64,000 bases of DNA from positions 48,980,001 through 49,044,000 of the forward strand of contig NC_043009.1 in the NCBI RefSeq assembly GCF_006345805.1. The letters run 5' to 3'. The stretch is from Octopus sinensis. Lineage: Eukaryota. Positions 4,160-27,342 of the stretch are shown here, in pieces. A program made the position numbers and the translations under genes. Position 1 is the first letter of the stretch. Every line of letters begins with the position of its first letter. The notes below the pieces were generated by a model. It ran no database searches. It was not told the origin of the DNA and was given only the letters and a program-made list of their open reading frames with translations.

Positions 4160-4228
4160 TATTTTATTATTTTATTATCATCATTATTATTATCATTAGT
4201 ATCATTCTTTCTCTTGTTCTTCTGTTTC

Positions 4229-4298
<70 letters not shown>

Positions 4299-4335
4299 TC
4301 TATTTTATCATTACTATCATCACTATTATCATTGC

Positions 4336-4368
<33 letters not shown>

Positions 4369-4385
4369 CATCATCATCATCATCA

Positions 4386-4473
<88 letters not shown>

Positions 4474-4543
4474 TATTATTATTGCTATCATTATTACTAT
4501 TATCACTATTATTATTGCTATTATTATTATTATTATTATTATC

Positions 4544-4600
<57 letters not shown>
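4160..4600. repeat. (ATT)n/(ATC)n compound microsatellite
   Basis: Direct reading; it explains the poly-I/N/D/L ORFs. Confidence 0.95.
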
Positions 4601-5164: not shown

Positions 5165-5295
5165 TTTTATATACGTGTGTGTGTGTGTATGTGTGTGTGT
5201 GTGTATGTGTGTGTTTGTGTGTGTGTGTGTATTAAATGTGTATACATAAATATGTAATATTTATGTATGCATAAATGTAAATAAATATGTATTTG

Positions 5296-5331
<36 letters not shown>

Positions 5332-5408
5332 AATATAAATAGATAGATAGATAAATAGGGGAGAGAGGGAGATACATAACGCAATCATATATATATATAC
5401 AATTATAG

Positions 5409-5440
<32 letters not shown>

Positions 5441-5646
5441 GATATATATATACATATATAGATATACAAATATATATATATATATTTATATATAAATATA
5501 TATATATATATGATATATGTATATGAATATATATATGTACATTCTATATACATATACAAATATATACACGTGTATATATATATATACATATATATGAATT
5601 ATATATACAAATATATACATATATATATATAATATATAAATATATA

Positions 5647-5686
<40 letters not shown>

Positions 5687-5754
5687 TCGTATATATATAT
5701 AAATGTATATATACATATGCGTAAGTGCGTTTGAGTGTGCATGTGTGTGTATAA

Positions 5755-5800: not shown

Positions 5801-6179
5801 GTTTTCAGAATATGTTAGACAAGGTAATGTCGAAATGTAGATATTAAACAGGTTCAGTTCATCCGGGTAGAGTTTTTATTAAAATTATAACTACAAAGAC
5901 TGTTTATACATCATCACGAGGTCCCCGACTACAACAGAAACAACCAATAATTTGAAGGACTGTCCAGTTTCGGTTTTGTTGTTGTTGCTTTTTGTTGTTG
6001 TTAGCTTGTGGATGTTTTTGTTGTTGAGTATTTTTTTTCGTTGTTGATTTTTTCTTCTCCTTCCTCGTGATTAATGCGGTGAATGTAAGTAAAAAGCAAA
6101 ACGAACAAATGGCGTATGTTATCTGTTGGCATGGAAACTGAAATAAACATGTAATAAGTCTGCTTCCAAGGGAAAAAGA

Positions 6180-6214
6180 ACAGAGAGAGAGAGAGAAGGA
6201 AAAGATGATGATGG

Positions 6215-6251
<37 letters not shown>

Positions 6252-6565
6252 GAAGAGGAATAAGAAATAGTAGGAGGAGGAGGAGGAGGAAGGGGAAGAA
6301 GGCGGAGGAGGAGGAGGAAGAAGAAGAAGAGAAGAAAAAAAGGAGAAGGAGAGGAAGAGGGAAAAGGTGAAGGAGAAGAAGGGGAAGGAGGAGTATGAAG
6401 AAGAAGAAGAAGAAGAAAGAAGAAGAAGAAGAAAGAGAAGAAGAAGAAAGAGAAGAAGAAGAAAGAGAAGAAGAAGAAGAAGAGGAAGAAGAAAAACAAG
6501 AAGACGAAGAAGAAGAAGAAGAAGAAGAAGAAGAAGAAGAAGAAGAAGAAGAAGAAGAAGACGAC
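6180..6565. repeat. Purine-rich (GA)/(GAT)/(GGA)/(GAA)n microsatellite
   Basis: Direct reading. Confidence 0.95.
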
Positions 6566-7136
6566 GTTTTGTAATGACAGAGATATTGTAGTTTAACTAT
6601 TCATTGGGGTTGTTCCTATTTGTAGCAAACAGGACTGGGAAAAGTTAAATTTCATTGGCAAGTATTGGGTCTATCTTACGATACAAACCGTTTAAACGTA
6701 AGTTCGTAACTTGCAGCCGAGTGTCTCTACAGTTATTATGATTTGATGATTCGTTAAAATATTAATTATACTCAGGTAGATCTTTAGATCAAATGCTTTG
6801 AGCTGACATCAAATTCCGTCAAGGTAAACTTTTCTTTTCATCGTTCCGTAGTTGATAAATAACTACTATTAGTCATGCAACATCAACTGGTGTCACTAAG
6901 AAGATCAGAAGTCCATAGTGCTTTGAAGTAGCGCAAGTGTGTTGTTGGATCACCAGTTTTATCAACAAGCAGTAATCCGCTACCTGGATTGGTTGAAGAG
7001 GATCTTCCGCCCAGACTCTATCTTGTAGTTTCGCCGAATGAAGTTCATACATCGAATGAATATCAATACGTCCAATTTCCCGTCCATCATGATTTCGGCG
7101 TGACCTTTGCTCGAAGATTTTTTCGTCATTGAGGTT

Positions 7137-7472
7137 GGGGAAGCCCCTTCGGTCAGGAATGACGATGGGATTGCATCTAGAAAGTTACCCTCCGAGGTAC
7201 AAGTCCGGGTAATGTTGTTTATGGAAGACCAGAAGTCGCCCATGCATACCAACTTTCTCTCTCTACGCCATTGATGTTATCCAAGGGAAAGGCAAAGGGG
7301 CCGACACAACTTGGCACCAGTGACGTCGCAACTCATTTCTACAGCTGAGTAAACTGAAGCTAGGTGAAATAAAGTGTCTTGCTCAAGAACACAACACGCA
7401 GCCCAGTCCGGGATTCGAACTCACAACCTCACGGCCGTAAGTTCGACGCTCTAATCACTGAGCCATGCGTCT
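7137..7472 (-). mobile_element. Near full-length SINE family D with an 11-bp target-site duplication
   Basis: tRNA-like head (TGGCTCAGTGATTAG...GAGTTCGAATCCC) and the GTGTTCTTGAGCAAGACACTT box. It is flanked by TCATTGAGGTT at 7126-7136 and 7473-7483. A homologous copy lies at 33658-33940. Confidence 0.9.
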
Positions 7473-9685
7473 TCATTGAGGTTAAAATCTCTATATACCC
7501 ACTGTTCGATGGCCGTTGATTCATACGAGTTATTCCACACTTTGACGGGTTACGAGTATTGTTTTTCATCCCTCGGGTTGTCCAAATCATTCTCCTCATG
7601 AAGCAAGTTCGGTAGGGTTGCGGTTTAGTCACCGACGACCCGACTATGCGACAGGTTGTACTGGGTTAGATGTTACCAGTAACATTTGAGAGGGACCTGA
7701 GATAAATAAAGTAGCAGCAATCAAGTATTAAAATAAATGTATCTCTCTGTCTTCCTCTCTCTCTTTCTTTCTTCATCCCTCCTCTCTTTCGTTCTTTCTT
7801 CCTCTCTCTTTTTTCTCTCTGTCACTCTCTTCTCTCTGTTTCCTTTTTGTCCCTCTTTCTCAGTGACGTTGCACCGTGATAACAATGCCAAGCGACTACT
7901 CACATATCCCCTTTCTCTATGAATAGTTTAAAGTCAATCGAAGAGCCGGCAAATCCCTTGCATAGAAAAATAAAAATAATACGGCAGTGAAACCTGTCGA
8001 TGATGACTCGATGCGCGGCGGAGTACAGAACTGATATAGCAGAATAGAAATAGAATATTCAGATTAATTCTACATGTCTAAGAGATTTAGTAGGTCTTTT
8101 AGACCTGCTAGACCGACACCATATTTTACGTGTACATAATGAAGAGATATTAGTCTAATTAATTCAATGGGGGAAGACATAAAGAAGCAGTACTAAGCCT
8201 GACTGTATAAACTGCAATACTTTATTCTCAGACCTCTTGATACTGAGTTCAAATAATTCTTGCTTGGACATTTTCGTTATATCTCCTGTCGTAGGGGTCG
8301 ATAAAATAAATGCCAGTTCTCTAAATAGAGTTGATTTAATAAACTGTAACCTTTTCGAGCAACAATCTCATATGTCATTATTAACATGTCTCAGCTGTTG
8401 GAATATAAACATGTAACATTTTTTAATAAGGCAATAATTTAAGACAAGGTTATTCCTGGAATAATTTCTAGGCTATTAATTAAAGGCTAAATTTTTTTCT
8501 GTCACTAAGTTTTAAATCTTTATTTAATTTCGCTCAAATTACAAACTGTTATAATTTTTATGTTCTATCTACAAAATTATGCTTCAAATAAATGCTGTAA
8601 ACGGTGTGTTTTTTACTTATGTTTAAATGTTTAAATATCTTCTCGATGTGGAATCTATTTCGCATTATAATTTAAGAGGATATAATCATACACCCGCCAC
8701 CAACACACAAACAACCACTCACGCGCATATCTACTACATATGTGAGAACTTCTATTTGTGGGTGTGTTTGTGGAGTTGTTAGCTAACTCCTCCTAAATCG
8801 TTTTATCGATATTTATGACACTTGACACGAGACTAGAACTCATGTCCGGAGACCTCGTGGCATACTAAGATTGTCGGAAAAAAATCTATAATAGGGCCCT
8901 TGAAAGGATCCTTATATATATCTAATATATTTTATTTAAAAAACTAAGGGAAATAACACATTCGCCCCTGGAAGGGATCCTTAGATATAGCCAAGGGAAA
9001 TAACCCATTCATTTTCCATAATTATTTGGTAAGTATGAAATTGAGTATGCTTATTTCTTAGTATTTGAACTGTTAGAGTTATTTTCGCAATTTATCCAGT
9101 ACAACTCTTAAACAAGTAAATAGTATTTTCTTAAACAATAGATCCACTTATTTCGGTTAGTGATTTATTCACGAATATAACAACACTAGCGCTGCTGAGG
9201 GTAATATTTTCTGGGAACGCACAAAAGCCATTTTCAGAGTTATTTACTTAAATTATTATTATCTCATATCTGATTAGACTCTTATTACGTATGCTTCACG
9301 ACTTTAGTATAGATATCTTATTAGCATTTCCTCCTATTTTCCATATACTCTGAGAACGCATTAAAGCCCCTTTCGGAACTACTTTATTTGAATTCTTATT
9401 CTCGGGTAACTAAATGCATGTTATTACAGATAAGACCTACGGTTTCAGAATAAGCTGGGTCTTATTTACTCATCGTTTTCCTCTACCCGTTACTCAGATT
9501 ATGTTTAAGGACCGATAGCTCTGCTCTTTCTTTTTCTTTGAAAATACCTTGAGATAATCAACATGTACGTTTCCTTTAGCAACAAAAAACAAACAAACAA
9601 AACAACTAAGAGGTGAAAAGAGAATTTAGAAAGCAGAAGGACTGGCCAAAGTCTCTGAATCCCATTTAGAAATATAAGATATATA

Positions 9686-9715
9686 GTAGTTGTGGTAGTG
9701 GTGGTGGTGGTAGTA

Positions 9716-9755
<40 letters not shown>

Positions 9756-9985
9756 CAGCAGTAGAAACAGCAGCGGCAGTATCAGCAACAACAGTAGCAA
9801 CAGTGGCAGCAGCAGTATTACTAGTAATAGTAGTAGTATTAGTAGTAATAGCAGCAGCAGCGCCAGCATCAGCAGAAATAGAGACGGCAGCATCAGCAAC
9901 TGCAGTAGCAGCAGTGGTAGCAGCAGAAGTGGCAGCAGCAGCAGCAGTAGTACTAATAGTAGAAGTAGTAGTAGCAGTAGTAGTA
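9686..9985. repeat. (AGT)n/(AGC)n microsatellite abutting the large array
   Basis: Direct reading. Confidence 0.95.
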
Positions 9986-10000
9986 GGTGTTTTTGTTATT

Positions 10001-12381
10001 GTTCAAACCAGTTCAAACTGGTTCAAATGTCAGGAATGTCTGGAATGTCAGGAATATCTGGAATGTCAGCAATGTCTGGCATGTCAGAGATCAAAGACGG
10101 TGCCGACAAACCGGTTCAAAGCGAATCAAACCGGTTCAAACCGGTTCAAACCGGATCAAACTGGATCAAACCGGTTCAAACCGGATCAAACCGGTTCAAA
10201 TGTCAGGAATGTCTGAGATCAAAGACGGTGCCAACAGAGATCAAAGAGTGTGCCGACAAAGATCAAAGACGGTGCCGACAAACCGGTTCAAACCAGTTCA
10301 AATGTCAAGAATGTCTGAGATCAAAGACGGTGCCTACAGAGATCAAAGAATGTGCCAACAAACATCAAAGACGGTGCCGACAAACAGGTTCAAACCGAAT
10401 CAAACCGGTTCAAACCGGTTCAAACTGGTTCAAACCGGTTCAAGCCGGATCAAACCGGATCAAACCGGTTCAAACCTGTTCAAACTGGTTCAAACCGGTC
10501 CAAATCGGATCAAACCGGATCAAACCGGTTCAAATGTCAGGAATGTCTGAGATCAAAGACGGTGCCGACAGAGATCAAAGAGTGTGCCGACAAAGATAAA
10601 AGACGGTGCCGACAAACCGGTTCAAACTGTTTCAAACTGGTTCAAACCGGTTCGAACCAGTTCAAACTGGATCAAACCGTTTCAAACTGGTTCAAACCGG
10701 TTCAAACCGGATCAAACCGGTTCAAATGTCAGGAATGTCAGAGATCAAAGACGATGCCGACTGAGATCAATGATTGTGCCGACAAAGATCAAAGACGGTG
10801 CCGACCAACCGGTTAAAATGTCAGGAATATCAGGAATGTCTGGAATGTCTGGAATGTCAGGAATGTCTGGAATGTCAGGAATGTCAGAGATCAAAGACGG
10901 TGCCGACAAAGATCAAAGACGGTGCCGACAAATATCAAAGACGGTGCCGACAAACCAGTTCAAACCGGATCAAACCGGTTCAAATGTCAGGAATGTCAGA
11001 GATCATAGACGGTGCCGACAGAGATCAAAGAGTGTGCCGACAAAGATCAAAGCCGGCGCCGACCAACCAGTTCAAATGTCAGTAATGTCAGAATTGTCTG
11101 GAATGTCTGGAATGTCAGGGATGTCAGGAATGTCTGGAATGTCAGGAATATCAGAGATCAAAGACGGTGCCGACAAATATCAAAGACGGTGCCGAAAAAC
11201 CGGTTGAAACCGGATCAAACCGGTTAAAATATCAGGAATGTCTGAGATCATAGACGGTGCCAACAGAGATCAAAGAGTGTGCCGAAAAGATTAACCGGTT
11301 CAATTGTCTGGAATGTCAGGAATGTCTGGAATGTCTGGAATGTCTGGAATGTCAGAAATGTCTAAAATGTCAGGAATGTTCAAACCGGATCAAACCGGTT
11401 CAAATGTCAGGAATGTCTGAGATCACAGACGTTGCCGAAAGAGATCAAAGTGTGTGCCGACAAAGATCAAAGACGGTGCCGACAAACCGGTTCAAACCGG
11501 TTCAAACAAGATCAAACCGGTTCAGACAACATCAAACCAGATCAAACCGGTTCAAACTGGTTCAAACAAGTCCAAAGCGGATCAAACCGGATCAAACCGG
11601 TTCAAATGTCAGGAATGTCTAAGACGGTGCCAACAGAGATAAAAGAGTGTGCCGACATAGATCAAAGACGGTGCCGACAAACCGGTTCAAACCGGATCAA
11701 ACCGGTTCGAACCGGATCAAATCGGCTAAGATGTCAGGAATGTCAGAGATCAAAGACGGTGCCGACAGAGATCAAAGAGTGTGCCGAAAAGATCAAAGTC
11801 GGTGCCGATTAACCGGATCAAATGTCTGGAATGTCAGGAATGTCTGGAATGTCAAGATTGTGTAAAATGTCAGGAATGTCAGAGATCAAAGACAGTGCGG
11901 AGAGATCTCAAAGAGTGTGCTGACAAAGATCAAAGACGGTGCCGACAAACCGGTTCAAACCGAATCAAACCGGTTCAAACCGGTTCAAACTGGTTCAAAC
12001 CGGTCCAAGCCAGATCAAACTCTTTCGAACTGGTTCAAAATGGTTCAAACCGGATCAAACCGGTTCGAACTGGTTCAAACCTGTTCAAACCGGTCCACAA
12101 CGGAACAAACCGGTTAAAATGTCAGGAATGTCGGAGATCAAAGAGGGTGCCGACAGAGATCAAAGAGTGTGCGGAAAAGATCACTGACGGTGGCGATTAA
12201 CCGGTTCAAATGTCTGGAATGTCAGGAATGTCAGGAATGTCTGGAATGACAGGAATGTCTAAAATGTCAGGAATGTCAGAGATCAAAGACAGTGACGACA
12301 GAGATCAAAGAGTGTGCCGATAATGATCAAAGACGGTGGCGACAAACCGGTTCAAACCGAATCAAACCGGTTCAAAACGGA
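10001..12381 (+). repeat. Left modular minisatellite array of 10-bp TCAAACCGG[T/A], 9-bp GGAATGTC[A/T] and 22-bp GAGATCAAAG(ACGGT/AGTGT)GCCGACA modules
   Basis: The three unit types cycle in the order 10-bp block, 9-bp block, 22-bp block, with a variable copy number in each block. Confidence 0.95.
10001..12381. promoter_or_regulatory. Candidate homotypic TF-site cluster (Grainyhead/CP2, TEAD, TCF plus helper)
   Basis: The units match AACCGGTT/CNRG-N6-CNRG, ACATTCCW at a 3-nt spacer, and CTTTGAT plus RCCG. Function is inferred only. Confidence 0.5.
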
Positions 12382-15300
12382 TTCCCCTCTCAAATCCCCC
12401 ACTCTGGAATGTTCAACGAATCTTCCTCCCCTTCACCTCTCAAATCCCCCTCTCTGGAATGTTCAACGATCCTTCCTCCCCTTCCTCCCCTTCACCTCTC
12501 AAATCCCCCTCTCTGGAATGTTCAACGATCTTTCCATCACTTCCTCCCCTTCATCTCTCAAATCCCAATCTCTGGAATGTTCAACGATCCTTCCTCTCCT
12601 TCCTCCCCTTCACCTCACAAATCCCCCTCTCTGGAATGTTCAACATTCCTCCCTCCCCTTCCTCACCTTCATTTCTCAAATCCCCCTCTCTGGAATGTTC
12701 AAAGATCTTTCCCCCCCTTCCTACCCTTTAGATCTGATATCCCCCTTCCTACCCTTTAGATCTGATATCCCCCTTCTTCCCCTTCCTCCCCTTCTTCCCC
12801 CTTCTTCCCCTTCCTCCCCTTCCTCCCCTTCACCTCTCAAATCCCCCTCTCTGGAATGTTCAACTTTCCTCCCTCCCCTTACTCGCCTTCATTTCTCAAA
12901 TCCCCCTCTCTGGAATGCTCAATATTCCTTTCTCCCCTTCCTCCCCTTCACCTCTCCAATCCCCCTCTCTGGAATGTTCAACATACCTCCTCCCCTTCCT
13001 CCCCTTCACCTCTCAAATCCCCCTCTCTGGAATGTTCAACATTTCTCCTTCCCCATCCTCCCCTTCATTTCTCAAATCCCCCTCTCTGGAATGTTCAACG
13101 CTTCACCTCTCAAATCCCCCTCTCTGGAATGTTCAACTTTCCTCCCTCCCCTTCCTACCCTTCACCTCTCACATCCCCCTCTCTGGAATGTTCAACATTT
13201 CTTCCTCACCTTCACCTCTCAAATCCCCCTCTCTGGTATGTTCAACGATCCTTCCATCCCTTCTTCCACTTCATCTCTCAAATCACCCTCTCTGGAATGT
13301 TCAAAGATATTTCCTCCCCTTCCCCCCCTTCAGCTCTCAAATACACCTCTCTGGATGTTCAACATTCCTTCCTCCCCTTCCTCCCCTTCACCTCGCAAAT
13401 CCCCCTCTCTGGAATGTTCAACTTTCCTCCCTCCCCTTCCTCCCCTTCATTTCTCAAATCCCCCTCTCTGGAATGTTCAACGATCCTTCCACCCCTTCCT
13501 CCACTTCACCTCTCAAATCCCCCTCTCTGGAATGTTCAACATTTTTCCTCCCCTTCCTTCCCTCACCTCTCAAATCCCCTCTCTGGAATGTTCAACATTC
13601 CTCCTCCCCTTCCTACCCTTCACCTCTCCAATCCCCCTCTCTGGAATGTTCAACATTCCTCCCTCCCCTTCCTCCCCTTCATATCTCAAATCCCCCTCTC
13701 TGGAATGTTCAAAGATATTTCCTCCCCTTCCTCCCCTTCAGCTCTCAAATACACCTCTCTGGAATGTTCAACATTCCTTCCTCCCCTTCCTCCCCTTCAC
13801 CTCGCAAATCCCCCTCTCTGGAATGTTCAACTTTCCTCCCTCCCCTTCCTCCCCTTCATTTCTCAAATCCCCCTCTCTGGAATGTTCAACGATCCTTCCA
13901 CCCCTTCCTCCACTTCACCTCTCAAATCCCCTCTCTGGAATGTTCAACATTTTTCCTCCCCTTCCTTCCCTTCACCTCTCAAATCCCCTTCTCTGGAATG
14001 TTCAACATTCCTCCTCCCCTTCCTACCCTTCACTCTCCAATCCCCCTCTCTGGAATGTTCAACATTCCTCCCTCCCCTTCCTCCCCTTCATATCTCAAAT
14101 CCCCCTCTCTGGAATGTTCAAAGATATTTCCTCCCCTTCCTCCCCTTCAGCTCTCAAATGCCCCTCTCTGGAATGTTCAACTTTCCTCCTCACCTTCCTC
14201 CCCTTCATTTCTCAAATCCCCCTCTCTGGAATGTTCAACGATCCTTCCTCCCCTTCTCCCCTTCCTCTCTGGAATGTTCAAAGATCTTTCCTCCCTTCCT
14301 CCCCTTCAGCTCTCAAATCCCCCTCTCTGGAATGTTCAACATTCCTTCCTGCCCTTCCTCCCCTTCACCTCTCAAATCCCCTCTCTGGAATGTTCAACTT
14401 TCCTCCTCCCCTTCCTCCCCTCATTTCTCAAATCCCCCTCTCTGGAATGTTGAACGTTCCTTCCTCCCCTTCCTCACATTCACCTCTCAAATCACCCTCT
14501 CTGGAATGTTCAACATTTTTCCTCCCCTTCCTTCACTTCACCTCTCAAATCCCCCTCTCTGGAATGTTCAACGATCCTTTCTCCCCTTCCTCTCCTTCAC
14601 CTCTCCAATCCTCCTCTCTGGAATGTTCAACATTCCTTTCTCCCCTTCCTCCCTTTCACCTCTCAAATCCCCCTCTCTGGAATGTTCAACATTCCTCCCT
14701 CCCCTTCCTCCCCTTCATTTCTCAAATCCCCCTCTCTAGAATGTTCAACGTTTCTCCTTCCCCATCCTCCCCTTCATTTCTCAAATCCCCCTCTCTGGAA
14801 TGTTCAATGATCTTTCCTCCCATTCCTACGCTTCACCTCTCAAATCCCCCTCTCTGGAATGTTCAACTTTCCTTCCTCCCCTTCCTCCCCTTCACCTCTC
14901 AAATCCCCCTCTCTGGAATGTTCAACTTTCCTCCCCTTCCTCCCCTTCACCTCTCAAATCCCCCTCTCTGGAATAATCAACTTTCCTCCCCTTCCTCCCC
15001 TTCACCTCTCAAATCCCCCTCTCTGGAATGTTCAACTTTCCTCCCTCCCCTTACTCCCCTTCATTTCTCAAATCCCCCTCTCTGGAATGCTCAACATTCC
15101 TTTCTCCCCTTCCTCCCCTTCATTTCTCAAATCCCCCTCTCTGGAATGTTCAAAGATCTTTCCTCCCCTTCCTCCCCTTCACCTCTCAAATCCCACTCTC
15201 TGGAATGTTCAACATTCCTCCCTCCCCTTCCTCCCCTTCATTTCCCAAATCCCCCTCTCTGGAATGTTCAAAGGTCTTTCCTCCCCTTCCTTCCCTTCAG

Positions 15301-18300
15301 CTCTCAAATCCCCCTCTCTGGAATGTTCAACATTCCTTCCTCCCCTTCACCTCTCAAATCCCCCTCTCTGGAATGTTCAACATTTCTTCCTCACCTTCAC
15401 CTCTCAAATCCCCCTCTCTGGAATGTTCAACGATCCTTCCATCCCTTCAAAGATATTTCCTCCCCTTCCTCCCCTTCAGCTCTCAAATACCCCTCTCTGG
15501 AATGTTCAACATTCCTTCCTCCCCTTCCTCCCCTTCACCTTGCAAATCCCCCTCTCTGGAATGTTCAACTTTCCTCCCTCCCCTTCCTCCCCTTCATTTC
15601 TCAAATCCCCCTCTCTGGAATGTTCAATGATCCTTCCTCCCCTTCCTCCACTTCACCTCTCAAATCACCCTCTCTGGAATGTTCAACGATCCTTCCTCCC
15701 CTTCCTCCCCTTCACCTCTCAAATCCCCCTCTCTGGAATGTTCAACATTCCTTCCTCCCCTTCCTCCCCTTCACCTCTCCAATCCCCCTCTCTGGAATGT
15801 TCAACATTCCTCCCTCCACTTCATCCCCTTCATTTCTAAAATCCCCCTCTCTGGAATGTTCAAAGATATTTCCTCCCCTTCATTTCTCAAATCCCCCTCT
15901 CTGGAATGTTCAACATTCCTTCCTCTCCTTCCTCCCCTTCACCTCTCAAATCCCCCTCTCTGGAATGTTCAACTTTCCTCCCTCCCCTTCCTCCCCTTCA
16001 TTTCTAAAATCCCCCTCTCTGGAATGTTCAACGTTCCTTCCTCCCCTTCCTCCCCTTCACCTCTCAAATCCCCCTCTCTGGAATGTTCAACATTTTTCCT
16101 CCCCTTCCTTCCCTTCACCTCTCAAATCCCCCTCTCTGGAATGTTCAACGATCCTTTCTCCCCTTCCTCCACTTCACCTCTCCAATCCTCCTCTCTGGAA
16201 TGTTCAACATTCCTTTCTCCCCTTCCTCCCTTTCACCTCTCAAATCCCCCTCTCTGGAATGTTCAACATTCCTCCCTCCTCTTCCTCCCCTTCATTTCTC
16301 AAATCCCCCTCTCTGGAATGTTCAAAGATCTTTCCTCCCCTTCCTCCTCTTCAGCTCTCAAATCCCCCTCTCTGGAATGTTCAACATTTTTCCTCCCCTT
16401 CCTTCCCTTCACCTCTCAAATCCCCCTCTCTGGAATGTACAACGATCCTTTCTCCCCTTCCTCCCCTTCACCTCTCCAATCCCCCTCTCTGGAATGTTCA
16501 ACATTCCTTTCTCCCCTTCCTCCCCTTCACCTCTCAAATCCCACTCTCTGGAATGTTCAACATTCCTCCCTCCCCTTCCTCCCCTTCACCTCTCCAATCC
16601 CCCTCTCTGGAATGTTCAATATTCCTTCCTCCCCTTCCTCCCCTTCACCTTTCAAATCCCCCTCTCTGGAATGTTCAAAGATCTTTCCTCCCCTTCCTAC
16701 CCTTTACCTTTCAAATCCCCCTCTCTGGAATGTTCAACGATCCTTCCTCCCCTTCACCTCTCAATCCCCCTCTCTGGAATGTTCAACATTCCTCCCTCCC
16801 CTTCCTCCCCTTAATTTCTCAAATCCACCTCTCTGGAATGTTCAAATATCTTCCCCCCCCTTCTCCCCCTTCAGATCTCAAATCCCCCTCTCTGGAATGT
16901 TCAACATTCCTTCCTCCCCTTCCTCCCCTTCACCTCTCAAATCCCCCTCTCTGGAATGTTCAACTTTCCTCCCTCCCCTTCCTCCCCTTCATTTCTCAAA
17001 TCCCCCTCTCTGGAATGTTCAACATTCCTTTCTCCCCTTCCTCCCCTTCACCTCTCCAATCCCCCTCTCTGGAATGTTCAACATTCCTTCCTCCCCTTCC
17101 TCCCCTTCACCTCTCAAATCCCCCTCTATGGAATGTTCAACATTTCTCCTTCCCCTTCCTCCCCTTCATTTCTGAAATCCCACTCTCTGGAATGTTCAAC
17201 TTTCCTCCCTCCCCTTCATTTCTCAAATCCCCCTTTCTGGAATGTTCAACACTTCTTCCTCACCTTCACCTCTCAAATCCCCCTCTCTGGAATGTTCAAC
17301 GATCCTTCCATCCCTTCCTCCCCTTCATCTCTCAAATCACACTCTCTGGAATGTTCAACGAACCTTCCTCTCCTTCCTCCCCTTCACATCTCAAAGCCCC
17401 CTATCTGGAATGTTCAACATTCCTGCCTCCACTTCCTCCCCTTCATCTCTCAAATCCCTCTCTCTGGAATGTTCAAAGATCTTTCCTCCCCTTCCTCGCT
17501 TTCAGCTCTCAAATCCCCCTCTGTGGAATGTTCAACATTCCTTCCTCCTTTTCCTCCCCTTCCCCTCTCAAATCCCCCCTCTCTGGAATGTTCAACTTTC
17601 TTCCCTCCCCTACCTCCCCTTCACCTCTCAAATCCCCCGCTCTGGAATGTTCAACATTCCTTCCTCCCCTTCCTCCCCTTCCTCCCCTTCACCTCTCCAA
17701 TCCCCCTCTCTGGAATGTTCAACATTCCTTCCTCCCTTTCCTCCCCTTCACCTCTCAAATCCCCCTCTCTGGAATGTTCAACATTCCTTCAGCCTCTCCT
17801 CCCCTTCATCTCTTGAATCCCCCTCTCTGGAATGTTCAACGATCCTTCCTCTCCTTCCTCCCCTTCACCTCTCAAATCCCCCTCTCTGGAATATTCAACG
17901 ATCCTCCCTCCCCTTCCTCCCCTTCATTTCTCAAATCCCCCTCTCTGGAATGTTCAACGATCCTTCCTCCCCTTCCTCCACTTCACCTCTCAAATCCCCC
18001 TCTCTGGAATGTTCAACGATCCTTCCTCCCCTTCCTCCCCTTCACCTCTCCAATCCCCCTCTCTGGAATGTTCAACATTCCTCCCTCCCCTTCCTCCCTC
18101 CCCTTCCTCCCCTTCATTTCTCAAATCCCCCTCTCTGGAATGTTCAAAGTTATTTCCTCCCCTTCCTCCCCTTCAGCTCTCAAATCCCCCTCTCTGGAAT
18201 GTTCAACATTCCTCCCCTTCCTCCCCTTCACCTCTCAAATCACCCTCTCTGGAATGTTCAACATTCCTCCCTCCCCTTAATCCCCTTCATTTCTCAAATC

Positions 18301-20616
18301 CCCCTCTCTGGAATGTTCAACATTTTTCCTCCACTTCCTTCCCTTCACCTCTCAAGTCCCCCTCTCTGGAATGTTCAACGATCCTTTCTCCCCTTCCTCT
18401 CCTTCACCTCTCCAATCCCCCTCTCTGGAATGTTCAACATTCCTTTCTCCCCTTCCTCCCCTTCACCTCTCAAATCCCCCTCTCTGGAATGTTCAACATT
18501 CTTCCCTCCCCTTCCTCGCCTTCATTTCTCAAATCCCCCTCTCTGGAATGTTCAAAGATCTTTCCTCCCCTTCCTCCTCTTTAGCTCTCAAATCACCCTC
18601 TCTGGAATGTTCAACATTCCTTCCTCCCCTTCTCCTGTTCACCTCTCCAATCCCCCTCTCTGGAATGTTCAACATTCCTTCCTCCCCTTCCTCCCCTTCA
18701 CCTCTCAAATCCCACTCTCTTGAATGTTCAACATTCCTCCCTCCCCTTCCTCCCCTTCACCTCTCCAATCCCCCTCTCTGGAATGTTCAACATTCCACCC
18801 TCCCCTTCCTCCCCTTAATTTCTCAAATCCCCCTCTCTGGAATGTTCAAATATCTTTCCCCCCTTCTCCCCCTTCAGATCTCAAATCCCCCTCTCTGGAA
18901 TGTTCAACATTCCTTCCTCCCCTTCCTCCCCTTCACCTCTCAAATCCCCCTCTCAGGAATGTTCAACTTTCCTCCCTCCCCTTCCTCCCCTTCATATCTC
19001 AATTCCCTTCTCTGGAATGTTCAACATTCCTTTCTCCCCTTCCTCCCCTTCACCTCTCAAATCCCCCTTTCTGGAATGTTCAACTTTCCTCCCTCCCCTT
19101 CCTCCCCTTCATATCTCAAATCCCCCTCTCTGGAATGTTCAACATTCCTTTCTCCCCTTCCTCCCCTTCACCTCTCAAATCCCCCTCTCTGGAATGTTCA
19201 ACATTTCTCCTTCCCCTTCCTCCCCTTCATTTCTCAAATCCCACTCTCTGGAATGTTCAACTTTCCTCCCTCCCCTTCCTCCCCTTCATTTCTCAAATCC
19301 CCCTTTCTGGAATGCTCAACACTTCTTCCTCACCTTCACCTCTCAAATCCCCCTCTCTGGAATGTTCAACGATCCTTCCATCCCTTCCTCCCCTTCATCT
19401 CTCAAATCACACTCTTTGGAATGTTCAACGAACCTTCCTCTCCTTCCTCCCCTTCACATCTCAAAGCCCTCTCTCTGGAATGTTCAACATTCCTGCCTCC
19501 ACTTCCTCCCCTTCATTTCTCAAATCCCCCTCTCTGGAATGTTCAAAGATCTTTCCTCCCCTTCCTCCCTTTCAGCTCTCAAATCCCCCTCTCTGGAATG
19601 TTCAACATTCCTTCCTCCTCTTCCTCCCCTTCACCTCTCAAATCCCCCGCTCTGGAATGTTCAACATTCCTTCCTCCCCTTCCTCTCCTTCACCTCTCGA
19701 ATCCCCCTCTCTGGAATGTTCAACAATCCTTCCTCCCCTTCCTCTCCTTCACCTCTCAAATCCCCCTCTCTGGAATGTTCAACATTCCTTCAGCCTCTTC
19801 CTCCCCTTCACCTCTCGAATCCCCCTCTCTGGAGTGTTCAACGATCCTTCCTCTCCTTCCTCCCCTTCACCTCTCAAATCCCCCTCTCTGGAATGTTCAA
19901 CGAACCTTCCTCTCCTTCCTCCCCTTCACCTCTCAAATCGCCCTCTCTGGAATGTTCAACATTCCTCCCTCCCCTTCCTCTCCTTCATTTCTCAAATCCC
20001 CCTCTCTGGAATGTTCAAAGATCTTTCCTCCCCTTCCTCCCCTTCAGCTCTCAAATCCCCCTCTCTGGAATGTTCAACATTCCTTCCTCCCCTTCCTCCC
20101 CTTCACCTCTCAAATCCCCCTCTCTGGAATGTTCAACTTTCCTCCCTCCCCTTCCTCCCCTTCATTTCTCAAATCCCCCTCTCTGGAATGTTCAACGATC
20201 CTTCCTCCCCTTCCTCCCCTTCACCTCTCAAATCCCCCTCTGTGGAATGTTCAACATTTCTTTCTCCCCTTCCTTCCCTTCACCTCTCAAATCCCCCTCT
20301 CTGGAATGTTCAACATTCCTTCCTCCCCTTCCTCCCCTTCACCTCTCCAATCCCACTCTCTGGAATGTTCAACATTCCTTCCTCCCTTTCCTCCCCTTCA
20401 CCTCTCGAATCCCCCCTCTCTGGAATGTTCAACAATCCTTCCTCCCCTTTCTCTCCTTCACCTCTCAAATCCCCCTCTCTGGAATGTTCAACATTCCTGC
20501 AGCCTCTTCCTCCCCTTCACCTCTCGAATCCCCCTCTCTGGAATGTTCAACGATCCTTTCTCCCCTTCCTCTCCTTCACCTCTCAAATCCCCCTCTCTGG
20601 AATGTTCAACATTCCT
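12382..20616 (+). repeat. 8.2-kb C/T-rich satellite, ~59-bp monomer (about 140-150 copies by length)
   Basis: Monomer is approximately CCCTCTCTGGAATGTTCAACATTCCTTCCTCCCCTTCCTCCCCTTCACCTCTCAAATCC. Length varies mainly by gain or loss of TTCCTCCCC. Confidence 0.97.
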
Positions 20617-20691
20617 TCTTTGATCTTTTCGGCACACTCTTTGATCTATGTCGGCACCGTCTTTGACATTCCTGATATTTTAACCGGTTTG
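20617..20691 (-). repeat. Inverted 75-bp fragment of the flanking-array sequence at the right junction
   Basis: The reverse complement is CAAACCGGTTAAAATATCAGGAATGTCAAAGACGGTGCCGACATAGATCAAAGAGTGTGCCGAAAAGATCAAAGA, closest to 11216-11291. Confidence 0.9.
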
Positions 20692-21905
20692 CTCAAAGAC
20701 GGTGCCGCCAAACCGGTTCATACATGATCAAACCGGTTCAAATGTCAGGAATATCAGAGATCTAAGACGGTGCCGACTGAGATCAAAGAGTGTGCCGACA
20801 AAGATAAAATACGGTGCGGCCCAACCGGTTCAAATATCTGGAATGTCAGGAATGTCAGGAATGTCAGGAAAGTCTATAATGTCTGGAATGTCAGGAATGT
20901 CTGGAATGTCAGCAATGTCTGGAATGTCAGTGATCAAAGACGGTGCCGACAAACTGGGTCAAACCGGATCAAACCAGATCAAACCGGTTCAAACTGGTTC
21001 AAACCGGTCCAAACCGGATCAAACCGGATCAAACCGGTTCAATTGTCTGAGATCAAAGACGGTGCCGACAGAGATCAAAGAGTGTGCCGAAAAGATCAAA
21101 GACAGTGCCGACCAACCGGTTCAAATGTCAGGAATGTCAGGAATGTCTGGAATGTCTAGAATGTCAGGAATGTCTAAAATGTCAGGAATATCAGAGATCA
21201 AAGACGATGCCGACTGAGATCAAAGATTGTGCCGACAAAGATCAAAGACGGTGCCGACTGAGATCAAATATTGTGCCGACAAAGATCAAAGACGGTGCCG
21301 ACAAACCGGATCAAATGTTAGGAATGTCTGGAATGTCTGGAATGTCAGGAATGTCAGGAATGTCTGGAATGTCAGGAATGTCAGGAATATCAGGAATGTC
21401 AGTAATGTCTGGAATCTGAGGAATGTCTAGAATGTCTGGGATGTCTGGAATGTCAGTAAGGTCAGGAATGTCTGGAATGTCAGGAATGTATGGAATGTCT
21501 GAGATCAAAGACGGTGCCGACAGAGATCAATGAGTGTGCCGACAAAGATCAAAGACGGTGCCGACAAACTGGTTTAAACCGGATCAAACCTGTTCAAAGC
21601 GGTTCAAACTGGTTCAAACCGGTTCAAACTGGTTCAAACCGGTTCAAACCGGATCAAGCCGGTTTAAACCGGTTCAAACTTGTTCAAACCGGTCCAAACT
21701 GGATCAAACCGGTTCAAACCGGATCAAACCGGTTTAAATGTCAGGAATGTCTGAGATCAAAGTCGGTGCCGACAGAGATCAAAGAATGTGCCGAAAAGAT
21801 CATAGACGGTGCCGACCAACCGGTTCAAATAACAGGAATGTCAGGAATGTCTGAAATGTCTGGAATGTCAGGAATGTCTGGAATGTCAGGAATGTCTGAA
21901 ATGTT
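20692..21905 (+). repeat. Right modular minisatellite array, same modules and orientation as the left array
   Basis: Same 10-, 9- and 22-bp units in the same cyclic order. Confidence 0.95.
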
Positions 21906-23029
21906 CTTTTATCTGATCTCCTCAGTTTGAAGGGAGAGCGAGAGTGCGACCCATGATCAAAGAAATGACAACCCAGCCGCAACCTTCCGAATATCTTCTG
22001 TTTTTTTTTTAGTTTTTCATCTTTAGACTGAACTATATATTGTGTGTTGCTGTGTGTGTATGTATGTAAACTGAACTATATTTTATCTTTCTATTTTGCT
22101 TTGTTTGTTTTCTAATCACTTTAGTATATGATTTGATAGAGATTTAACTGCTTTGTCTAGCATAAGAGAAGACTTCATACTGGCCCTTTTACCGTTGATT
22201 AAGTAAAACGTAGATCCGTGTAGCAATGCACGATATCTTTATCGTTTCCTGCAACCCAAATTAATGAATGACCATTAAGTTGAAAGGCCATTATTTAGTC
22301 ACTTACAAATTCAATTCTTTCTTTTGATTCTCAGAATTATTCAAATTTAATCAAATTGCAGTTGATGCCAAAATGTTCGGCTTTTCCATTGTTGTGTTCA
22401 AATTTGATTTAATAACTTCCTTGTTGCAGGAAAATGTCCAAAGAATTTTGCAATAATTGTTTCGAAAACCACTTCTGTATTCTTCTCAGGAATCTGACAT
22501 ATTCTTGGCATTTGGCCTCGTTTTATCCCTCACCCTTTCCTATCCACAGAAGCACCATTAGTAAATTATGTTGATTTAATTTAACGTGGATGTCAATTGA
22601 CCATCAACTAAAGGTTTTCTGGTGTTCTTGACAATCAGGCTTCGGCCCACACGTGATTATATATGTGTGTCTTTAAATGTATGATTCTGTAGTATTCACA
22701 GTCGACATATAAATATAAATACATAAATATGAATATATGCGCGCGCGAGTTAATGTGGGATGTTGTTCGTGTCCGTGTATTTCTATGTGAGATCCCCCAT
22801 CGTGAGCGTGCCTTTGTTGTAGTCTGTTTAAGTTTCTATACATACATACAAACCTACATACATACATACATACAGACAGACATGCATAGCAACATACACA
22901 CAAGCAAACACAAACGCACGGATACACCAACGCACACATGTATATATGCAGAAACAGATGGGAAGATAGCTGATAGATAAACAGACAGATAAGTAAATAC
23001 AGGTGTACATACGTACATACATACAAAGA

Positions 23030-23163
23030 TTGATAGACAAAAAGAGAGATATATAGATACATTAGCTGATACATGGCTAAACAGATAGATAGATTGATAG
23101 ATAGATAGACAGACAGACAGTCAGACAGACCGACAGACAGACAGACAGATAGATAGATAGATG

Positions 23164-23221
<58 letters not shown>

Positions 23222-23315
23222 CAGGTAGAGACAAACAGATAGATAGGGAGCCAGCCAGCCAGCTAGCCAGACAGACAGACAGATAGATAGAAATATATGT
23301 ATATTTATAAATAGA
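23030..23315. repeat. (GATA)n/(GACA)n microsatellite
   Basis: Direct reading. Confidence 0.9.
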
Positions 23316-24188
23316 TAGTTGGTCTGATCGAAAAGTATCCGGACTGCTGCCATAGTAACGAAGTTAAACCACGCAGAGTGAAGCTGCTTTGCACAAATTG
23401 ACATTGAACTTACTGTGCATGTGCACTGAGTGTTAAAGTTATATATGACTTCCACTGTTTACAGCAGTGCTTGGAAGGAGCGTGTGTAGCGTGTGGTCGT
23501 CGCATTGACCATGACAGAGAAAGTTAAGCAGAGAATGTGCATCAAATTTGGCGAAAATGTTGGCAGTATCTGCTCAAAGGTCTACGCAAAGTTTTCAAAA
23601 TGTTTTCACCGTTCTCGACACAATCAAGGAGGTCTTGTGCAACTGAAACCAGAGTGTATTTTTGCTCAACTGAAAGCGGTTTTGGTGTAAACTTGACAGA
23701 CATTCGTCTCATAATCAAATCTTCATTGATAATGGACTGAACTGAGAGGCAACTAATATGCAATCCTCTGATAACTCACGGATTTCGACGATTTCCCATT
23801 ATATCTGCAAGCACATCTGCAATGACTTTCTTACTTTAGCAGGAGGCGGGTCTCCCAGAACGTTCAACAATTTCGGCCACCTTGGAAACGTCTAAACGAC
23901 TCGTGTGCGGCTCATACACTCATCTCCATACACTTTCTGCAACTTTCCGTAGGCCTCTGAGCAGGTATCACCGTGACAACTTTCTCTGTCATGGTCAATG
24001 CGACGATCATACGCTACACATGTTCTTTCAAAGCACTGCTGTAAACAGCAGAAGTGTGCTACGACGTTAAAACTATGTGCGTAGATAGAGCAGTGTTCAA
24101 GATCAATCTGTGTGTAGCGGTTTCACTTTGCGTACTTTAGCTTTGTTACTATGGCAACATTTCGGATACTGATCGATCAGAACTCGTA
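23316..24188 (-). mobile_element. Non-autonomous Tc1/mariner derivative with ~210-bp inverted arms (copy 1)
   Basis: Termini TAGTTGGTCTGATCGAAAAGTATCCGGA and TCGGATACTGATCGATCAGAACTCGTA. Mariner transposase fragments include IMRRMSVKFTPKPLSVEQKYTLVSVAQDLLDCVEN. Confidence 0.9.
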
Positions 24189-24189
24189 G

Positions 24190-24570
<381 letters not shown>

Positions 24571-24749
24571 ATATCATGTTTTAAATAAGTTTCTAAAACA
24601 AAACACTATTATTTAAGTTAGAAAATAAATGTAAAATATTAAAAATGTATATTCATACGCATGCAGATCATAAGCACTTGCACATATGCACTTACACATT
24701 CACAGTTTTTGTATGAATGCTTTTTTTTGTGAATGAATGTATGCATACA

Positions 24750-24817
24750 TGCATTTATATATATATACACCCATGTAACATATATTTACAAACACATACA
24801 CGTATATATATATAATA

Positions 24818-24874
<57 letters not shown>

Positions 24875-25168
24875 AATATATATATATATTGTACGAAGAG
24901 GGGTGATATTTACTTCGTGTAAAAATATAATAAATATGTACTTTAGAAGAAGCATTGAATAATTCTTCAGTTTAATGTTAAATTGTATTTCGCACAGCAT
25001 AACATATAAGCAAATAATGTGTATGTGTGTGTGTGAGAGAGAGAGAGAGAAAGAGAGAGAAAGTGCGTGTGTGCGTGTGTGTGCGTATATGTATATATAT
25101 GTGTGTATGTATGCATGTATGTATGTATTTGAGTCTGTATTTGCATGTGTGTGTGTATGTGTACATTC

Positions 25169-25201
<33 letters not shown>

Positions 25202-25286
25202 AATATTTCATAATATATATATGTACATTATTAAAAGACTATGCAATAATTGTTTTTAGAATGTACTTTAATGTAATCTAATAAAG

Positions 25287-25358
<72 letters not shown>

Positions 25359-25439
25359 CAACGACAACAACAACAACAACAATAATAATAACAATGATAA
25401 TAATAATAATAATAATAATAATTAATAATAATAATAATG

Positions 25440-25508
<69 letters not shown>

Positions 25509-25510
25509 TA
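24750..25510. repeat. (TA)n, (TG)n, (GA)n and (AAT)n microsatellite cluster
   Basis: Direct reading. Confidence 0.9.
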
Positions 25511-27185: not shown

Positions 27186-27342
27186 CATTCCTCCGGTATC
27201 GGTAAAACAAAATTTCTTATCTATAATATTCATTTATTTCAAGCAGTCAATGTTTCGTATCACATTCCTCCGGTATCGGTAAAATAAAATTTCTTATCTA
27301 TAATATTCATTTATTTCAAGCAGTCAATGTTTCGTATCACAT
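27186..27342 (+). repeat. Recent 2 x 77-bp tandem duplication
   Basis: CATTCCTCCGGTATCGGTAAAA[C/T]AAAATTTC...GTTTCGTATCA starts at 27186 and 27263, with one mismatch. Confidence 0.95.

What the first reader, a model, noticed from the sequence alone, without database searches (positions are those of the whole stretch)
10025..12280. 9-bp GGAATGTC[A/T] module forms tandem TEAD/Scalloped double sites
Seen: runs such as GGAATGTCTGGAATGTCAGGAATGTC, with up to about 7 consecutive units (e.g. 21321-21390). The main polymorphic base is A/T immediately 5' of GGAATG. Established: TEAD binds ACATTCC[A/T] (MCAT), and tandem sites with a 3-nt spacer (9-bp period) are bound cooperatively. The variable position coincides with the degenerate W of the motif. 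Inference: the variation pattern fits constraint by TEAD binding.
Basis: partly seen in the sequence, partly recalled or inferred. Interest (0 to 1): 0.72.

Follow-up and report, generated by a model that had tools for sequence, protein, structure and literature searches.

The report
Octopus satellite repeat resembling TEAD sites
The 9-base GGAATGTC[A/T] runs are real and match the best-known double binding site for TEAD proteins, but they are one expandable sub-repeat of a 12-kb non-coding octopus satellite, and their variation looks like ordinary repeat amplification, not selection for TEAD binding.

Summary
GGAATGTCW occurs 68 times against 1.8 expected. It sits in 22 in-register arrays of 2-21 units, and the ninth base is A or T in 95 of 98 internal units.

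The arrays belong to a single complex satellite at 10004-21906. Its two flanks are a mosaic of three sub-repeats: A (9 bp), B (10 bp, CAAACCGGWT) and C (22 bp, AGATCAAAGACGGTGCCGACAA). The centre holds about 137 copies of a 59-bp repeat.

The minus strand reads ACATTCCWG with a 9-bp period. That is a perfect match to the published Tead single motif (RMATTCCWD) and to the double-motif spacing. The block holds 234 perfect single sites and 35 perfect double sites.

The inference that TEAD binding constrains the sequence fails every internal test I could run:
- The GGAATG core is no better conserved than the neighbouring non-TEAD modules.
- 40 of 43 substitutions outside the ninth base break the motif.
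- Module B has its own A/T dimorphic position.
- The A/T pair is already present in the unexpanded two-unit seed, and it alternates as an 18-bp dimer.
- Whole arrays are segmental copies of one another.
- A sister Octopus vulgaris locus of the same B/C satellite has no 9-mer at all.
- The same 9-mer arrays occur in bacteria.

Most likely this is a neutral satellite that happens to be TEAD-competent. The chance that it is a working TEAD platform is low but not zero, because human HSat3 is a precedent.

The parts
10004..12382 (+). Left mosaic block of the satellite. The grammar [B]n [A]m g [C]2-3 is repeated about 16 times. A = GGAATGTCW (9 bp), B = CAAACCGGWT (10 bp), C = AGATCAAAGACGGTGCCGACAA (22 bp, usually three ordered variants).
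   Evidence: Module parse; TRF periods 9/18/27, 10/20/30, 22 and 102-232; in-register arrays.
10024..10086 (+). A array of 7 units with ninth-base string ATATATA. Period 18 fits better than period 9 (90% against 79% matches).
10815..10886 (+). A array of 8 units with ninth-base string AATTATAA, identical to the array at 21122. It includes a run of 6 perfect units at 10833-10886.
11073..11153 (+). A array of 9 units with ninth-base string AATTAATAA.
11301..11381 (+). A array of 9 units. It ends in a direct A-to-B junction, GGAATGTTCAAACCGG, which resembles the core of the 59-mer.
11819..11881 (+). A array of 7 units. It is the start of the 456-bp segment duplicated at 21441-21896.
12207..12278 (+). 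A array of 8 units.
10197..10214 (+). Example of the unexpanded two-unit seed CAAATGTCA GGAATGTCT, lying between a B array and a C triplet. There are 12 such seeds: 7 read A then T, 4 read AA and 1 reads AG.
11946..12115 (+). B array of 17 units. Its paralogue at 21565-21734 also has 17 units. Position 9 is T/A dimorphic, and the CCGG decays to CTGG or CCAG.
10216..10281 (+). Typical C triplet. The variants come in a fixed order: ...GACGGTGCC..CAG, then ...GAGTGTGCC..CAA, then ...GACGGTGCC..CAA.
12383..20616 (+). A 59-bp satellite of about 137 units, with consensus CTTCACCTCTCAAATCCCCCTCTCTGGAATGTTCAACATTCCTTCCTCCCCTTCCTCCC. Each unit carries CTGGAATGT, a perfect TEAD-type site in 127 of 135 units. 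A decayed inverted second half-site is perfect in 33 of 135 units.
20617..20691 (-). One mosaic unit (B, A seed, C x3) in inverted orientation, at the right junction of the 59-mer array.
   Evidence: reverse complement printed
20692..21906 (+). Right mosaic block, with the same grammar as the left block. It contains segmental copies of left-block segments.
20831..20929 (+). A array of 11 units.
21122..21193 (+). A array of 8 units with ninth-base string AATTATAA.
21312..21500 (+). Longest A array, 21 units. It contains the run of 7 perfect units at 21321-21383.
21835..21906 (+). Last A array, 8 units. The satellite ends here against unique sequence.

Best explanation
The 9-bp module is a non-coding sub-repeat of a complex octopus satellite. 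It is not a selected array of transcription-factor sites.

The parent family consists of the 10-bp module B and the 22-bp module C. In the subfamily seen in this window, a stretch of about 23 bases, CAAATGTCAGGAATGTCTGAGAT, lies between B and C. It already contains two AATGTC(A/T)G units, the first with A and the second with T.

Replication slippage or unequal exchange, in steps of 9, 18 and 27 bp, expanded this seed at some positions into arrays of 7-21 units. Both alleles were carried along, which gives the A/T alternation. Larger segments of at least 456 bp, containing whole arrays, were then duplicated. A 59-bp repeat that shares the GGAATGTTCAA core expanded in the middle of the block.

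Shown here: the architecture, the seed, the alternation, the segmental copies, the absence of the module in a sister locus, and the lack of extra conservation. Inferred: slippage or unequal exchange as the process, and the neutrality of the TEAD match.

Because the unit is a perfect RMATTCCWD site at the ideal 9-bp spacing, the arrays would be expected to bind TEAD/Scalloped in vitro. I take this to be an incidental property.
For: - Architecture: the [B]n[A]m g[C]3 grammar and the TRF periods.
- Not coding: the 10- and 22-bp modules shift the reading frame after every array.
- Seed: 12 unexpanded two-unit seeds, 7 reading A then T.
- Alternation: 56 of 84 neighbours differ, against 44.4 +/- 4.3 expected, P = 0.005. 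Periods 18 and 27 fit as well as or better than period 9.
- Segmental copies: a gapless 456-bp match at 84% identity between 21441-21896 and 11822-12277, including 17-unit B arrays in both, and identical ninth-base strings AATTATAA at 10815 and 21122.
- Sister locus: L001 (Octopus vulgaris OX597818.1, 51.12 Mb) has 9.2 kb of B and C modules (265 GATCAAAGA, 99 CAAACCGG) and 0 GGAATGTC, with a direct B-to-C junction.
- Shared dimorphisms: the dimorphic positions of B and C are the same in both loci.
- No extra conservation of GGAATG: 6.3% per site against 4.4% and 5.3%, and 40 of 43 non-W substitutions break the motif.
- The 59-mer: comparing like base with like, the TEAD site is no more conserved than the rest of the unit (A 0.37% against 0.45%, T 1.2% against 1.7%, C 3.0% against 6.1%, none significant).
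- Base rate: tandem GGAATGTCW (3 or more units) occurs in 56 metagenome contigs of GC 0.23-0.70 and in 9 bacterial genomes, none with B or C modules.
Against: - The match to TEAD syntax is unusually complete. All nine positions fit RMATTCCWD, the orientation is direct, the period is exactly 9 bp, and there are 234 perfect sites in 11.9 kb against 8 in the other 52 kb.
- Two different repeat types in the block both carry the site.
- In the 59-mer, the least variable stretch (positions 20-36, 0-3% non-consensus) includes the site.
- A human satellite that recapitulates GGAATG does bind TEAD and recruit YAP (PMC11526998).
- The conservation tests count sequences, not independent events, and rest on one genome. 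They can show a lack of evidence for constraint but cannot prove neutrality.
Confidence: 0.75

Rival explanations
1. The arrays are a working TEAD/Scalloped binding platform, either selected or co-opted. Runs of optimally spaced double motifs would recruit multimers of TEAD with Yorkie/YAP or Vestigial-like cofactors, acting as a strong enhancer, as a sink for the factor, or as a nuclear-body organiser in the manner of human HSat3.
For: - Perfect RMATTCCWD units at the 9-bp double-motif spacing: 67 of 98 internal units and 35 perfect double motifs.
- The double motif is bound cooperatively with strict spacing and is highly active (PMC12008814).
- Clustered MCAT sites promote TEAD4 multimerisation (PMC13247214).
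- HSat3 binds TEAD1-4 and YAP (PMC11526998).
- 127 of 135 units of the 59-mer keep a perfect site.
Against: - The core is not conserved beyond the neighbouring non-TEAD modules, and substitutions fall mainly on invariant core bases.
- The A/T dimorphism is explained by the seed and by dimer amplification, and module B shows the same kind of dimorphism.
- The sister locus of the same satellite lacks the module altogether.
- The same arrays arise in organisms without TEAD.
- There are no occupancy, accessibility or expression data.
Confidence: 0.12
2. The block is the internal tandem-repeat region of a mobile element and was brought to this site by transposition. The TEAD-like sites would then be part of the element's own regulatory region.
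For: - B/C satellite arrays occur at two or more unlinked loci.
- Dispersed repeats are abundant in both loci.
- Some mobile elements carry TEAD motifs: PMC12008814 excludes ERVs when mapping double motifs, and PMC11698117 links Scalloped to Drosophila telomeric retrotransposons.
Against: - There is no direct or inverted repeat between the flanks 6000-10004 and 21906-26000.
- The flanks of L001 and of the window's block do not match each other.
- No transposase or reverse-transcriptase ORF adjoins the block.
Confidence: 0.07
3. The conserved part of the unit serves a different DNA-binding protein or a structural role, for example a satellite-binding protein, an HSF-type site, or heterochromatin or centromere function. 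The TEAD match would then be a by-product.
For: - In the 9-mer the least variable bases are AATGTC, not GGAATG.
- In the 59-mer the least variable stretch is the longer CTCTGGAATGTTCAA.
- GAATGTTC also fits an nGAAnnTTCn dimer (my own knowledge of HSF elements).
- Satellites are the relatively more methylated repeat class in octopus (PMC9476566).
Against: - Base-matched comparisons show no significant conservation of any part beyond what composition explains.
- No candidate protein is known.
- The array is small (12 kb).
Confidence: 0.05
4. The 9-mer encodes a peptide repeat, (Gly-Met-Ser)n, or (Asp-Ile-Pro)n on the other strand. The A/T position would then be a synonymous third codon base.
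For: - In frame, GGA ATG TCW reads Gly-Met-Ser, and W is synonymous.
- 31 of the 56 metagenome arrays lie in open frames of 150 or more codons.
- O. vulgaris annotation calls a protein (P0001) inside the sister satellite.
Against: - In the window, every array is bounded by 10-bp and 22-bp modules that shift the frame.
- The ORFs merely track the absence of stop codons.
- The only protein relatives are other satellite translations and low-complexity sequences.
- There are no Pfam domains.
Confidence: 0.01

Closest known systems
Tead double motif / tandem MCAT (GT-IIC) elements, i.e. TEAD/Scalloped-responsive enhancers (PMC12008814)
   Same: - The unit on the minus strand, ACATTCCWG, fits RMATTCCWD at all nine positions.
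- Orientation is direct.
- The hexamers are 3 bp apart, giving a 9-bp period, as in the high-affinity example GCATTCCCGACATTCCC.
   Different: - Known elements are pairs, or a few sites, within enhancers. Here there are runs of up to 21 units inside a satellite.
- No binding, accessibility or activity data exist for this locus.
- The core shows no extra conservation.
Human Satellite 3, (GGAAT)n, as a TEAD/YAP binding platform (PMC11526998, preprint)
   Same: A tandem satellite whose unit recreates the GGAATG core many times over, so the TEAD-site density is far above the genome background.
   Different: - HSat3 has a 5-bp period and megabase arrays next to rDNA, and binding has been shown experimentally.
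- Here the period is 9 bp, the arrays total about 1 kb of 9-mers within a 12-kb block, the lineage is unrelated, and nothing has been tested.
- The two are not homologous.
Complex or composite satellites with nested sub-repeats and higher-order units (general class)
   Same: - Several short modules alternate in a fixed grammar, with variable copy number of each module.
- There are dimeric and trimeric higher-order periods, and family-wide dimorphic positions.
- Segments are duplicated, and arrays lie at several loci.
   Different: I found no published description of this particular octopus family: an exact-sequence search of the paper library found 0 papers, and the O. vulgaris repeat-annotation paper does not discuss satellites.
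Octopus vulgaris B/C satellite at OX597818.1:51.12 Mb (locus L001)
   Same: - The 10-bp and 22-bp consensus units are the same, as are their dimorphic positions.
- Local alignments with the window's mosaic reach 66-72% identity over 0.9-2.3 kb.
   Different: It contains no 9-bp GGAATGTCW module and no 59-bp repeat. Its B-to-C junction is direct.

Membership tests
Tead double motif (TEAD/Scalloped cooperative site) | Each half matches the Tead single motif RMATTCCWD. | tested here: met
   67 of 98 internal units are perfect matches. There are 69 perfect matches in the two mosaic blocks.
Tead double motif (TEAD/Scalloped cooperative site) | Direct repeat with strict spacing: RMATTCCNNRMATTCCNN, i.e. 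a 9-bp period. | tested here: met
   35 perfect double motifs, all on the minus strand of the mosaic blocks and none elsewhere in the window. Spacing rule taken from PMC12008814.
Tead double motif (TEAD/Scalloped cooperative site) | Bound cooperatively by TEAD/Scalloped protein. | not testable with these tools
   Needs a gel-shift assay or in vivo occupancy data for octopus TEAD.
Tead double motif (TEAD/Scalloped cooperative site) | Functional constraint: core bases preserved better than neighbouring neutral sequence, with variation confined to degenerate positions. | tested here: not met
   The core is at 6.3% per site, against 4.4% in module B and 5.3% in module C. 40 of 43 non-W substitutions break the motif, and G1, G2 and G6 are the most variable core bases.
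Satellite / complex tandem repeat | Head-to-tail tandem copies, far more than chance would give. | tested here: met
   TRF arrays; 68 matches against 1.8 expected.
Satellite / complex tandem repeat | Higher-order periodicity and copy-number variation of the sub-repeats. | tested here: met
   Periods of 18/27, 20/30, 44 and 102-232 bp. A arrays have 2-21 units and B arrays have 2-17 units.
Satellite / complex tandem repeat | The same family is present at other loci or in related genomes. | tested here: met
   L001 in O. vulgaris carries modules B and C. Module A was not found anywhere else.
Satellite / complex tandem repeat | Non-coding. | tested here: met
   The 10- and 22-bp modules shift the frame, there are no informative protein relatives, and no Rfam family matches.
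TF-binding satellite platform (HSat3 type) | The unit recreates the GGAATG core at high density. | tested here: met
   256 CATTCC/GGAATG hexamers in 11.9 kb, against 13 in the other 52 kb.
TF-binding satellite platform (HSat3 type) | Very large arrays, and demonstrated TEAD/YAP localisation. | not testable with these tools
   Only one 12-kb block is seen. Genome-wide abundance and occupancy are unknown.
Tandem array carried by a mobile element | Terminal repeats, target-site duplication, or shared flanks between copies. | tested here: not met
   No match between the left and right flanks, and the flanks of L001 do not match the window's flanks.
Coding peptide repeat (GMS)n | A reading frame maintained across the repeat region. 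| tested here: not met
   The frame changes at every B or C module.

The most novel reading that the evidence does not exclude
An octopus satellite subfamily has acquired, and may have been co-opted for, arrays of optimally spaced TEAD/Scalloped double motifs. On this reading the 12-kb block, with 234 perfect sites, acts as a Hippo-pathway binding platform. That would be an independent invertebrate parallel to the TEAD-binding human satellite HSat3, but with the ideal 9-bp cooperative spacing.
Probability: 0.1. Interest if true: 0.65.

Novelty: new member of a known kind. Interest (0 to 1): 0.3.

Why it matters
If the arrays were bound in vivo, this would be a second, independent case of a satellite acting as a TEAD/YAP platform. 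It would also be a natural array of the strictly spaced double motif. Both would bear on how satellites soak up or concentrate transcription factors.

As the evidence stands, the value is mainly cautionary. A perfect, literature-backed motif match, with the 'right' degenerate position, can arise from ordinary repeat amplification. The neighbouring non-TEAD modules and a sister locus serve as internal controls that expose this.

The report also documents a composite octopus satellite family (9/10/22/59-bp modules) for which I found no published description.

Tried and rejected
- Coding repeat. Rejected because the frame shifts at each module. Protein searches returned only satellite translations and low-complexity sequences.
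- Structured RNA. No Rfam family reached its gathering score anywhere in the window.
- Mobile-element cargo. No flank repeats and no shared flanks. Pfam found no domain in the nearby ORFs, apart from a weak sub-threshold DUF1516 match.
- More copies of the 9-mer module in octopus genomes. Three protein searches with satellite ORF translations gave one true sister locus, L001, which lacks the module. The other hits (L058-L061) are marine-metagenome 10-mer arrays with no A or C modules.
- The window's own record. Exact look-ups of two window ORFs found nothing on record.
- Apparent conserved box in the 59-mer. Positions 20-36 vary by only 0-3%. The effect disappears when like bases are compared, because variability sits at C positions and at seven dimorphic sites.
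- Literature search by exact sequence. 0 papers.
- Literature on octopus satellites. Searches gave only a general repeat annotation and a methylation survey.
Full report
**What is in the sequence**

GGAATGTCW occurs 68 times in the window (67 on the plus strand), against 1.78 +/- 1.19 in dinucleotide-preserving shuffles. All but one copy lie in 10033-12278 or 20664-21897.

Read in register there are 22 arrays with 120 units. Twelve are two-unit 'seeds' and ten are long arrays of 7-21 units. The longest run of perfect units is seven, at 21321-21383.

In the 98 internal units the ninth base is 50 A, 45 T, 2 C and 1 G. The next most variable positions are G2 (14%), G1 (9%) and G6 (7%).

**Anatomy of the whole feature**

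The 9-mer is not a free-standing array. The interval 10004-21906 is one complex satellite.

Its flanks (10004-12382 and 20692-21906) are a mosaic of three sub-repeats:
- A = GGAATGTCW, 9 bp.
- B = CAAACCGGWT, 10 bp.
- C = AGATCAAAGACGGTGCCGACAA, 22 bp, usually three variants in a fixed order.

These follow the grammar [B]n [A]m g [C]2-3, repeated about 24 times. Where B is long (up to 17 units), A is the two-unit seed. Where B is short, A is expanded.

The centre (12383-20616) is a 59-bp satellite of about 137 units. Its core CTCTGGAATGTTCAACATTCC contains the same GGAATGT. One mosaic unit lies inverted at the right junction, at 20617-20691.

The region is not coding, because the 10- and 22-bp modules change the reading frame at every step. 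No Rfam family matches. The two flanks of the block share no direct or inverted repeat.

**Relatives**

Translating a satellite ORF and searching the protein collection found an annotated 'hypothetical predicted protein' of Octopus vulgaris (P0001). It lies on chromosome record OX597818.1 at 51.12 Mb (locus L001).

L001 carries 9.2 kb of the same B and C modules (265 GATCAAAGA, 99 CAAACCGG), with the same consensus. It has no GGAATGTC at all and no 59-mer. Its B-to-C junction is direct (CAAACCGG-AT-CAAAGACGG). In the window, the stretch TTCAAATGTCAGGAATGTCTGAGAT lies between the two modules.

The window and L001 also share dispersed repeats at 75-94% identity, so the window comes from an octopus genome. 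The 9-mer is therefore an optional, subfamily- or locus-specific part of a wider B/C satellite family.

**The TEAD match is real at the sequence level**

On the minus strand the unit reads ACATTCCWG. PMC12008814 uses RMATTCCWD as the Tead single motif. It describes a strictly spaced, cooperatively bound double motif (example GCATTCCCGACATTCCC, written RMATTCCNNRMATTCCNN), which has a 9-bp period. A 1-bp insertion or deletion weakens the cooperation. PMC11526998 states that two motifs 3 bp apart are the commonest arrangement in human enhancers.

The window has 242 perfect single motifs. Of these, 234 lie in the 11.9-kb block and 8 in the remaining 52 kb. It also has 35 perfect double motifs, all in the mosaic flanks.

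**The inference of constraint does not stand**

1. The non-consensus frequency in GGAATG is 6.3% per site. In module B (excluding its dimorphic and CpG positions) it is 4.4%, and in module C it is 5.3% (Fisher p = 0.14 and 0.43).
2. The hits fall on G1, G2 and G6, mostly as G>A. Those bases are invariant in the TEAD motif. Only 3 of the 43 non-W substitutions are of a tolerated type.
3. Module B, which is not a TEAD site, has its own A/T dimorphic position. It is 76 T, 35 A, 1 C and 1 G here and 53 T, 33 A, 3 G and 2 C in L001. Module C has fixed CG/GT and A/G variants in both loci. One high-frequency two-allele position per module is thus a property of this satellite family.
4. The A-then-T pair is already present in 7 of the 12 unexpanded seeds. 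There the first 'unit' is CAAATGTCA, a junction with B that is not a TEAD site.
5. A and T alternate more often than chance (56 of 84 neighbours differ, against 44.4 +/- 4.3 expected, P = 0.005). Periods of 18 or 27 bp fit as well as or better than 9 bp. This is what amplification of a dimer or trimer gives.
6. The arrays are not independent. 21441-21896 matches 11822-12277 without a gap over 456 bp at 84% identity, including 17-unit B arrays in both. The arrays at 10815 and 21122 have the identical ninth-base string AATTATAA.
7. In the 59-mer the site looks like the least variable stretch. When like bases are compared, the difference vanishes (A 0.37% against 0.45%, T 1.2% against 1.7%, C 3.0% against 6.1%, none significant). 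The inverted second half-site is perfect in only 33 of 135 units.

**Base rate outside animals**

The 26-base pattern of three tandem units occurs in 56 metagenome contigs of GC 0.23-0.70. Thirty-one of these lie in open frames of at least 150 codons, as (GMS)n or (DIP)n peptide repeats. The others are short non-coding variable-number repeats.

The pattern also occurs in nine bacterial genomes, among them Desulfogranum mediterraneum DSM 13871 and a Myxococcales genome bin with at least 12 units. None has B or C modules. Tandem arrays of this 9-mer therefore arise repeatedly where no TEAD exists.

**Most likely mechanism**

A stretch of about 23 bases carrying two AATGTC(A/T)G units lies between modules B and C in this subfamily but not in the sister locus. 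Slippage or unequal exchange, in steps of one to three units, expanded it at some positions and carried both alleles along. Larger segments were then duplicated, and a related 59-bp unit expanded in the middle of the block.

What is shown: the architecture, the seed, the alternation, the paralogy and the missing module in the sister locus. What is inferred: the process itself, and the neutrality of the TEAD match.

I put this explanation at 0.75. A working TEAD platform remains possible (0.12). The syntax match is complete, clustered sites promote TEAD multimerisation (PMC13247214), and human HSat3 binds TEAD and YAP (PMC11526998).

**Comparison and novelty**

The feature looks like a Tead double-motif array, but it fails the one membership feature I could test for function, namely constraint. 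It meets every tested feature of a complex satellite. It is analogous to HSat3, not homologous.

I found no published description of this satellite. I class it as a new member of a known kind, with modest interest. The main caveats are that everything rests on one window plus one sister locus, and that the substitution counts are of sequences rather than independent events.

Noticed in passing
window 12383-20616: A 59-bp satellite of about 137 units, 95 of 135 being exactly 59 bp. It is open in all three plus-strand frames, with ORFs up to 1988 aa. The unit has only three G, so stop codons are rare. A protein search found no relatives.
   Followed up: partly
window 12383-20616 (unit positions 26-42): Each unit carries the palindrome GGAATGT-TCA-ACATTCC. 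The first half is a perfect TEAD-type site in 127 of 135 units; the second half is decayed and perfect in only 33 of 135. GAATGTTC also fits an HSF-type nGAAnnTTCn dimer (my own knowledge), which is a reminder that several factor motifs can be read into this sequence.
   Followed up: partly
window 20617-20691: One mosaic unit (B, A seed, C x3) lies in inverted orientation exactly at the right-hand junction between the 59-mer array and the mosaic. This suggests a rearrangement at the boundary.
   Followed up: partly
window B arrays, e.g. 10381-10530, 11946-12115, 21565-21734: The CCGG of the 10-mer decays to CTGG (21 of 113 units) and CCAG (9 of 113), a CpG-deamination signature. PMC9476566 reports that satellites are the repeat class with relatively higher CpG methylation in Octopus bimaculoides.
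   Followed up: partly
L001 10001-10753 (Octopus vulgaris OX597818.1): The public annotation calls a 250-aa 'hypothetical predicted protein' entirely inside the B/C satellite, and a second 840-residue gene model also overlaps it. These are probably annotation artefacts.
   Followed up: no
L007, L012, L028, L033, L043, L046 (marine metagenome contigs): Contigs that share flanking sequence, from a low-GC marine organism, carry 6-13 units of GGAATGTCT. This looks like a variable-number tandem repeat between samples.
   Followed up: no
window 4160-4598, 5241-5718, 24187-24566, 25289-25508, 29282-29914, 32400-33267 and others: Microsatellite load is very high: (TAT)x148, (TA)x240, (TAGA)x94, (ATA)x73 and (ACAT)x215. 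TRF reports 226 rows in 64 kb.
   Followed up: no
window 37937-38387 (+) and 39376-39806 (-): Two copies of a dispersed repeat of about 430 bp lie in inverted orientation about 1 kb apart. The same repeat occurs several times in L001 at 75-82% identity.
   Followed up: no
window 27186-27342 and 27713-28147 (-): A 77-bp unit is repeated twice at 98% identity. The nearby 144-aa ORF looked transposase-like to me, but it has no Pfam match and is not on record as a called gene.
   Followed up: partly
L058, L060, L061 (marine metagenome contigs) and L059 (a 909-kb ENA assembly contig, ctg11654l): These contigs hold arrays of a CAAACCGG-type 10-mer without A or C modules. It is unknown whether they are related to the octopus module B or arose independently.
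   Followed up: no
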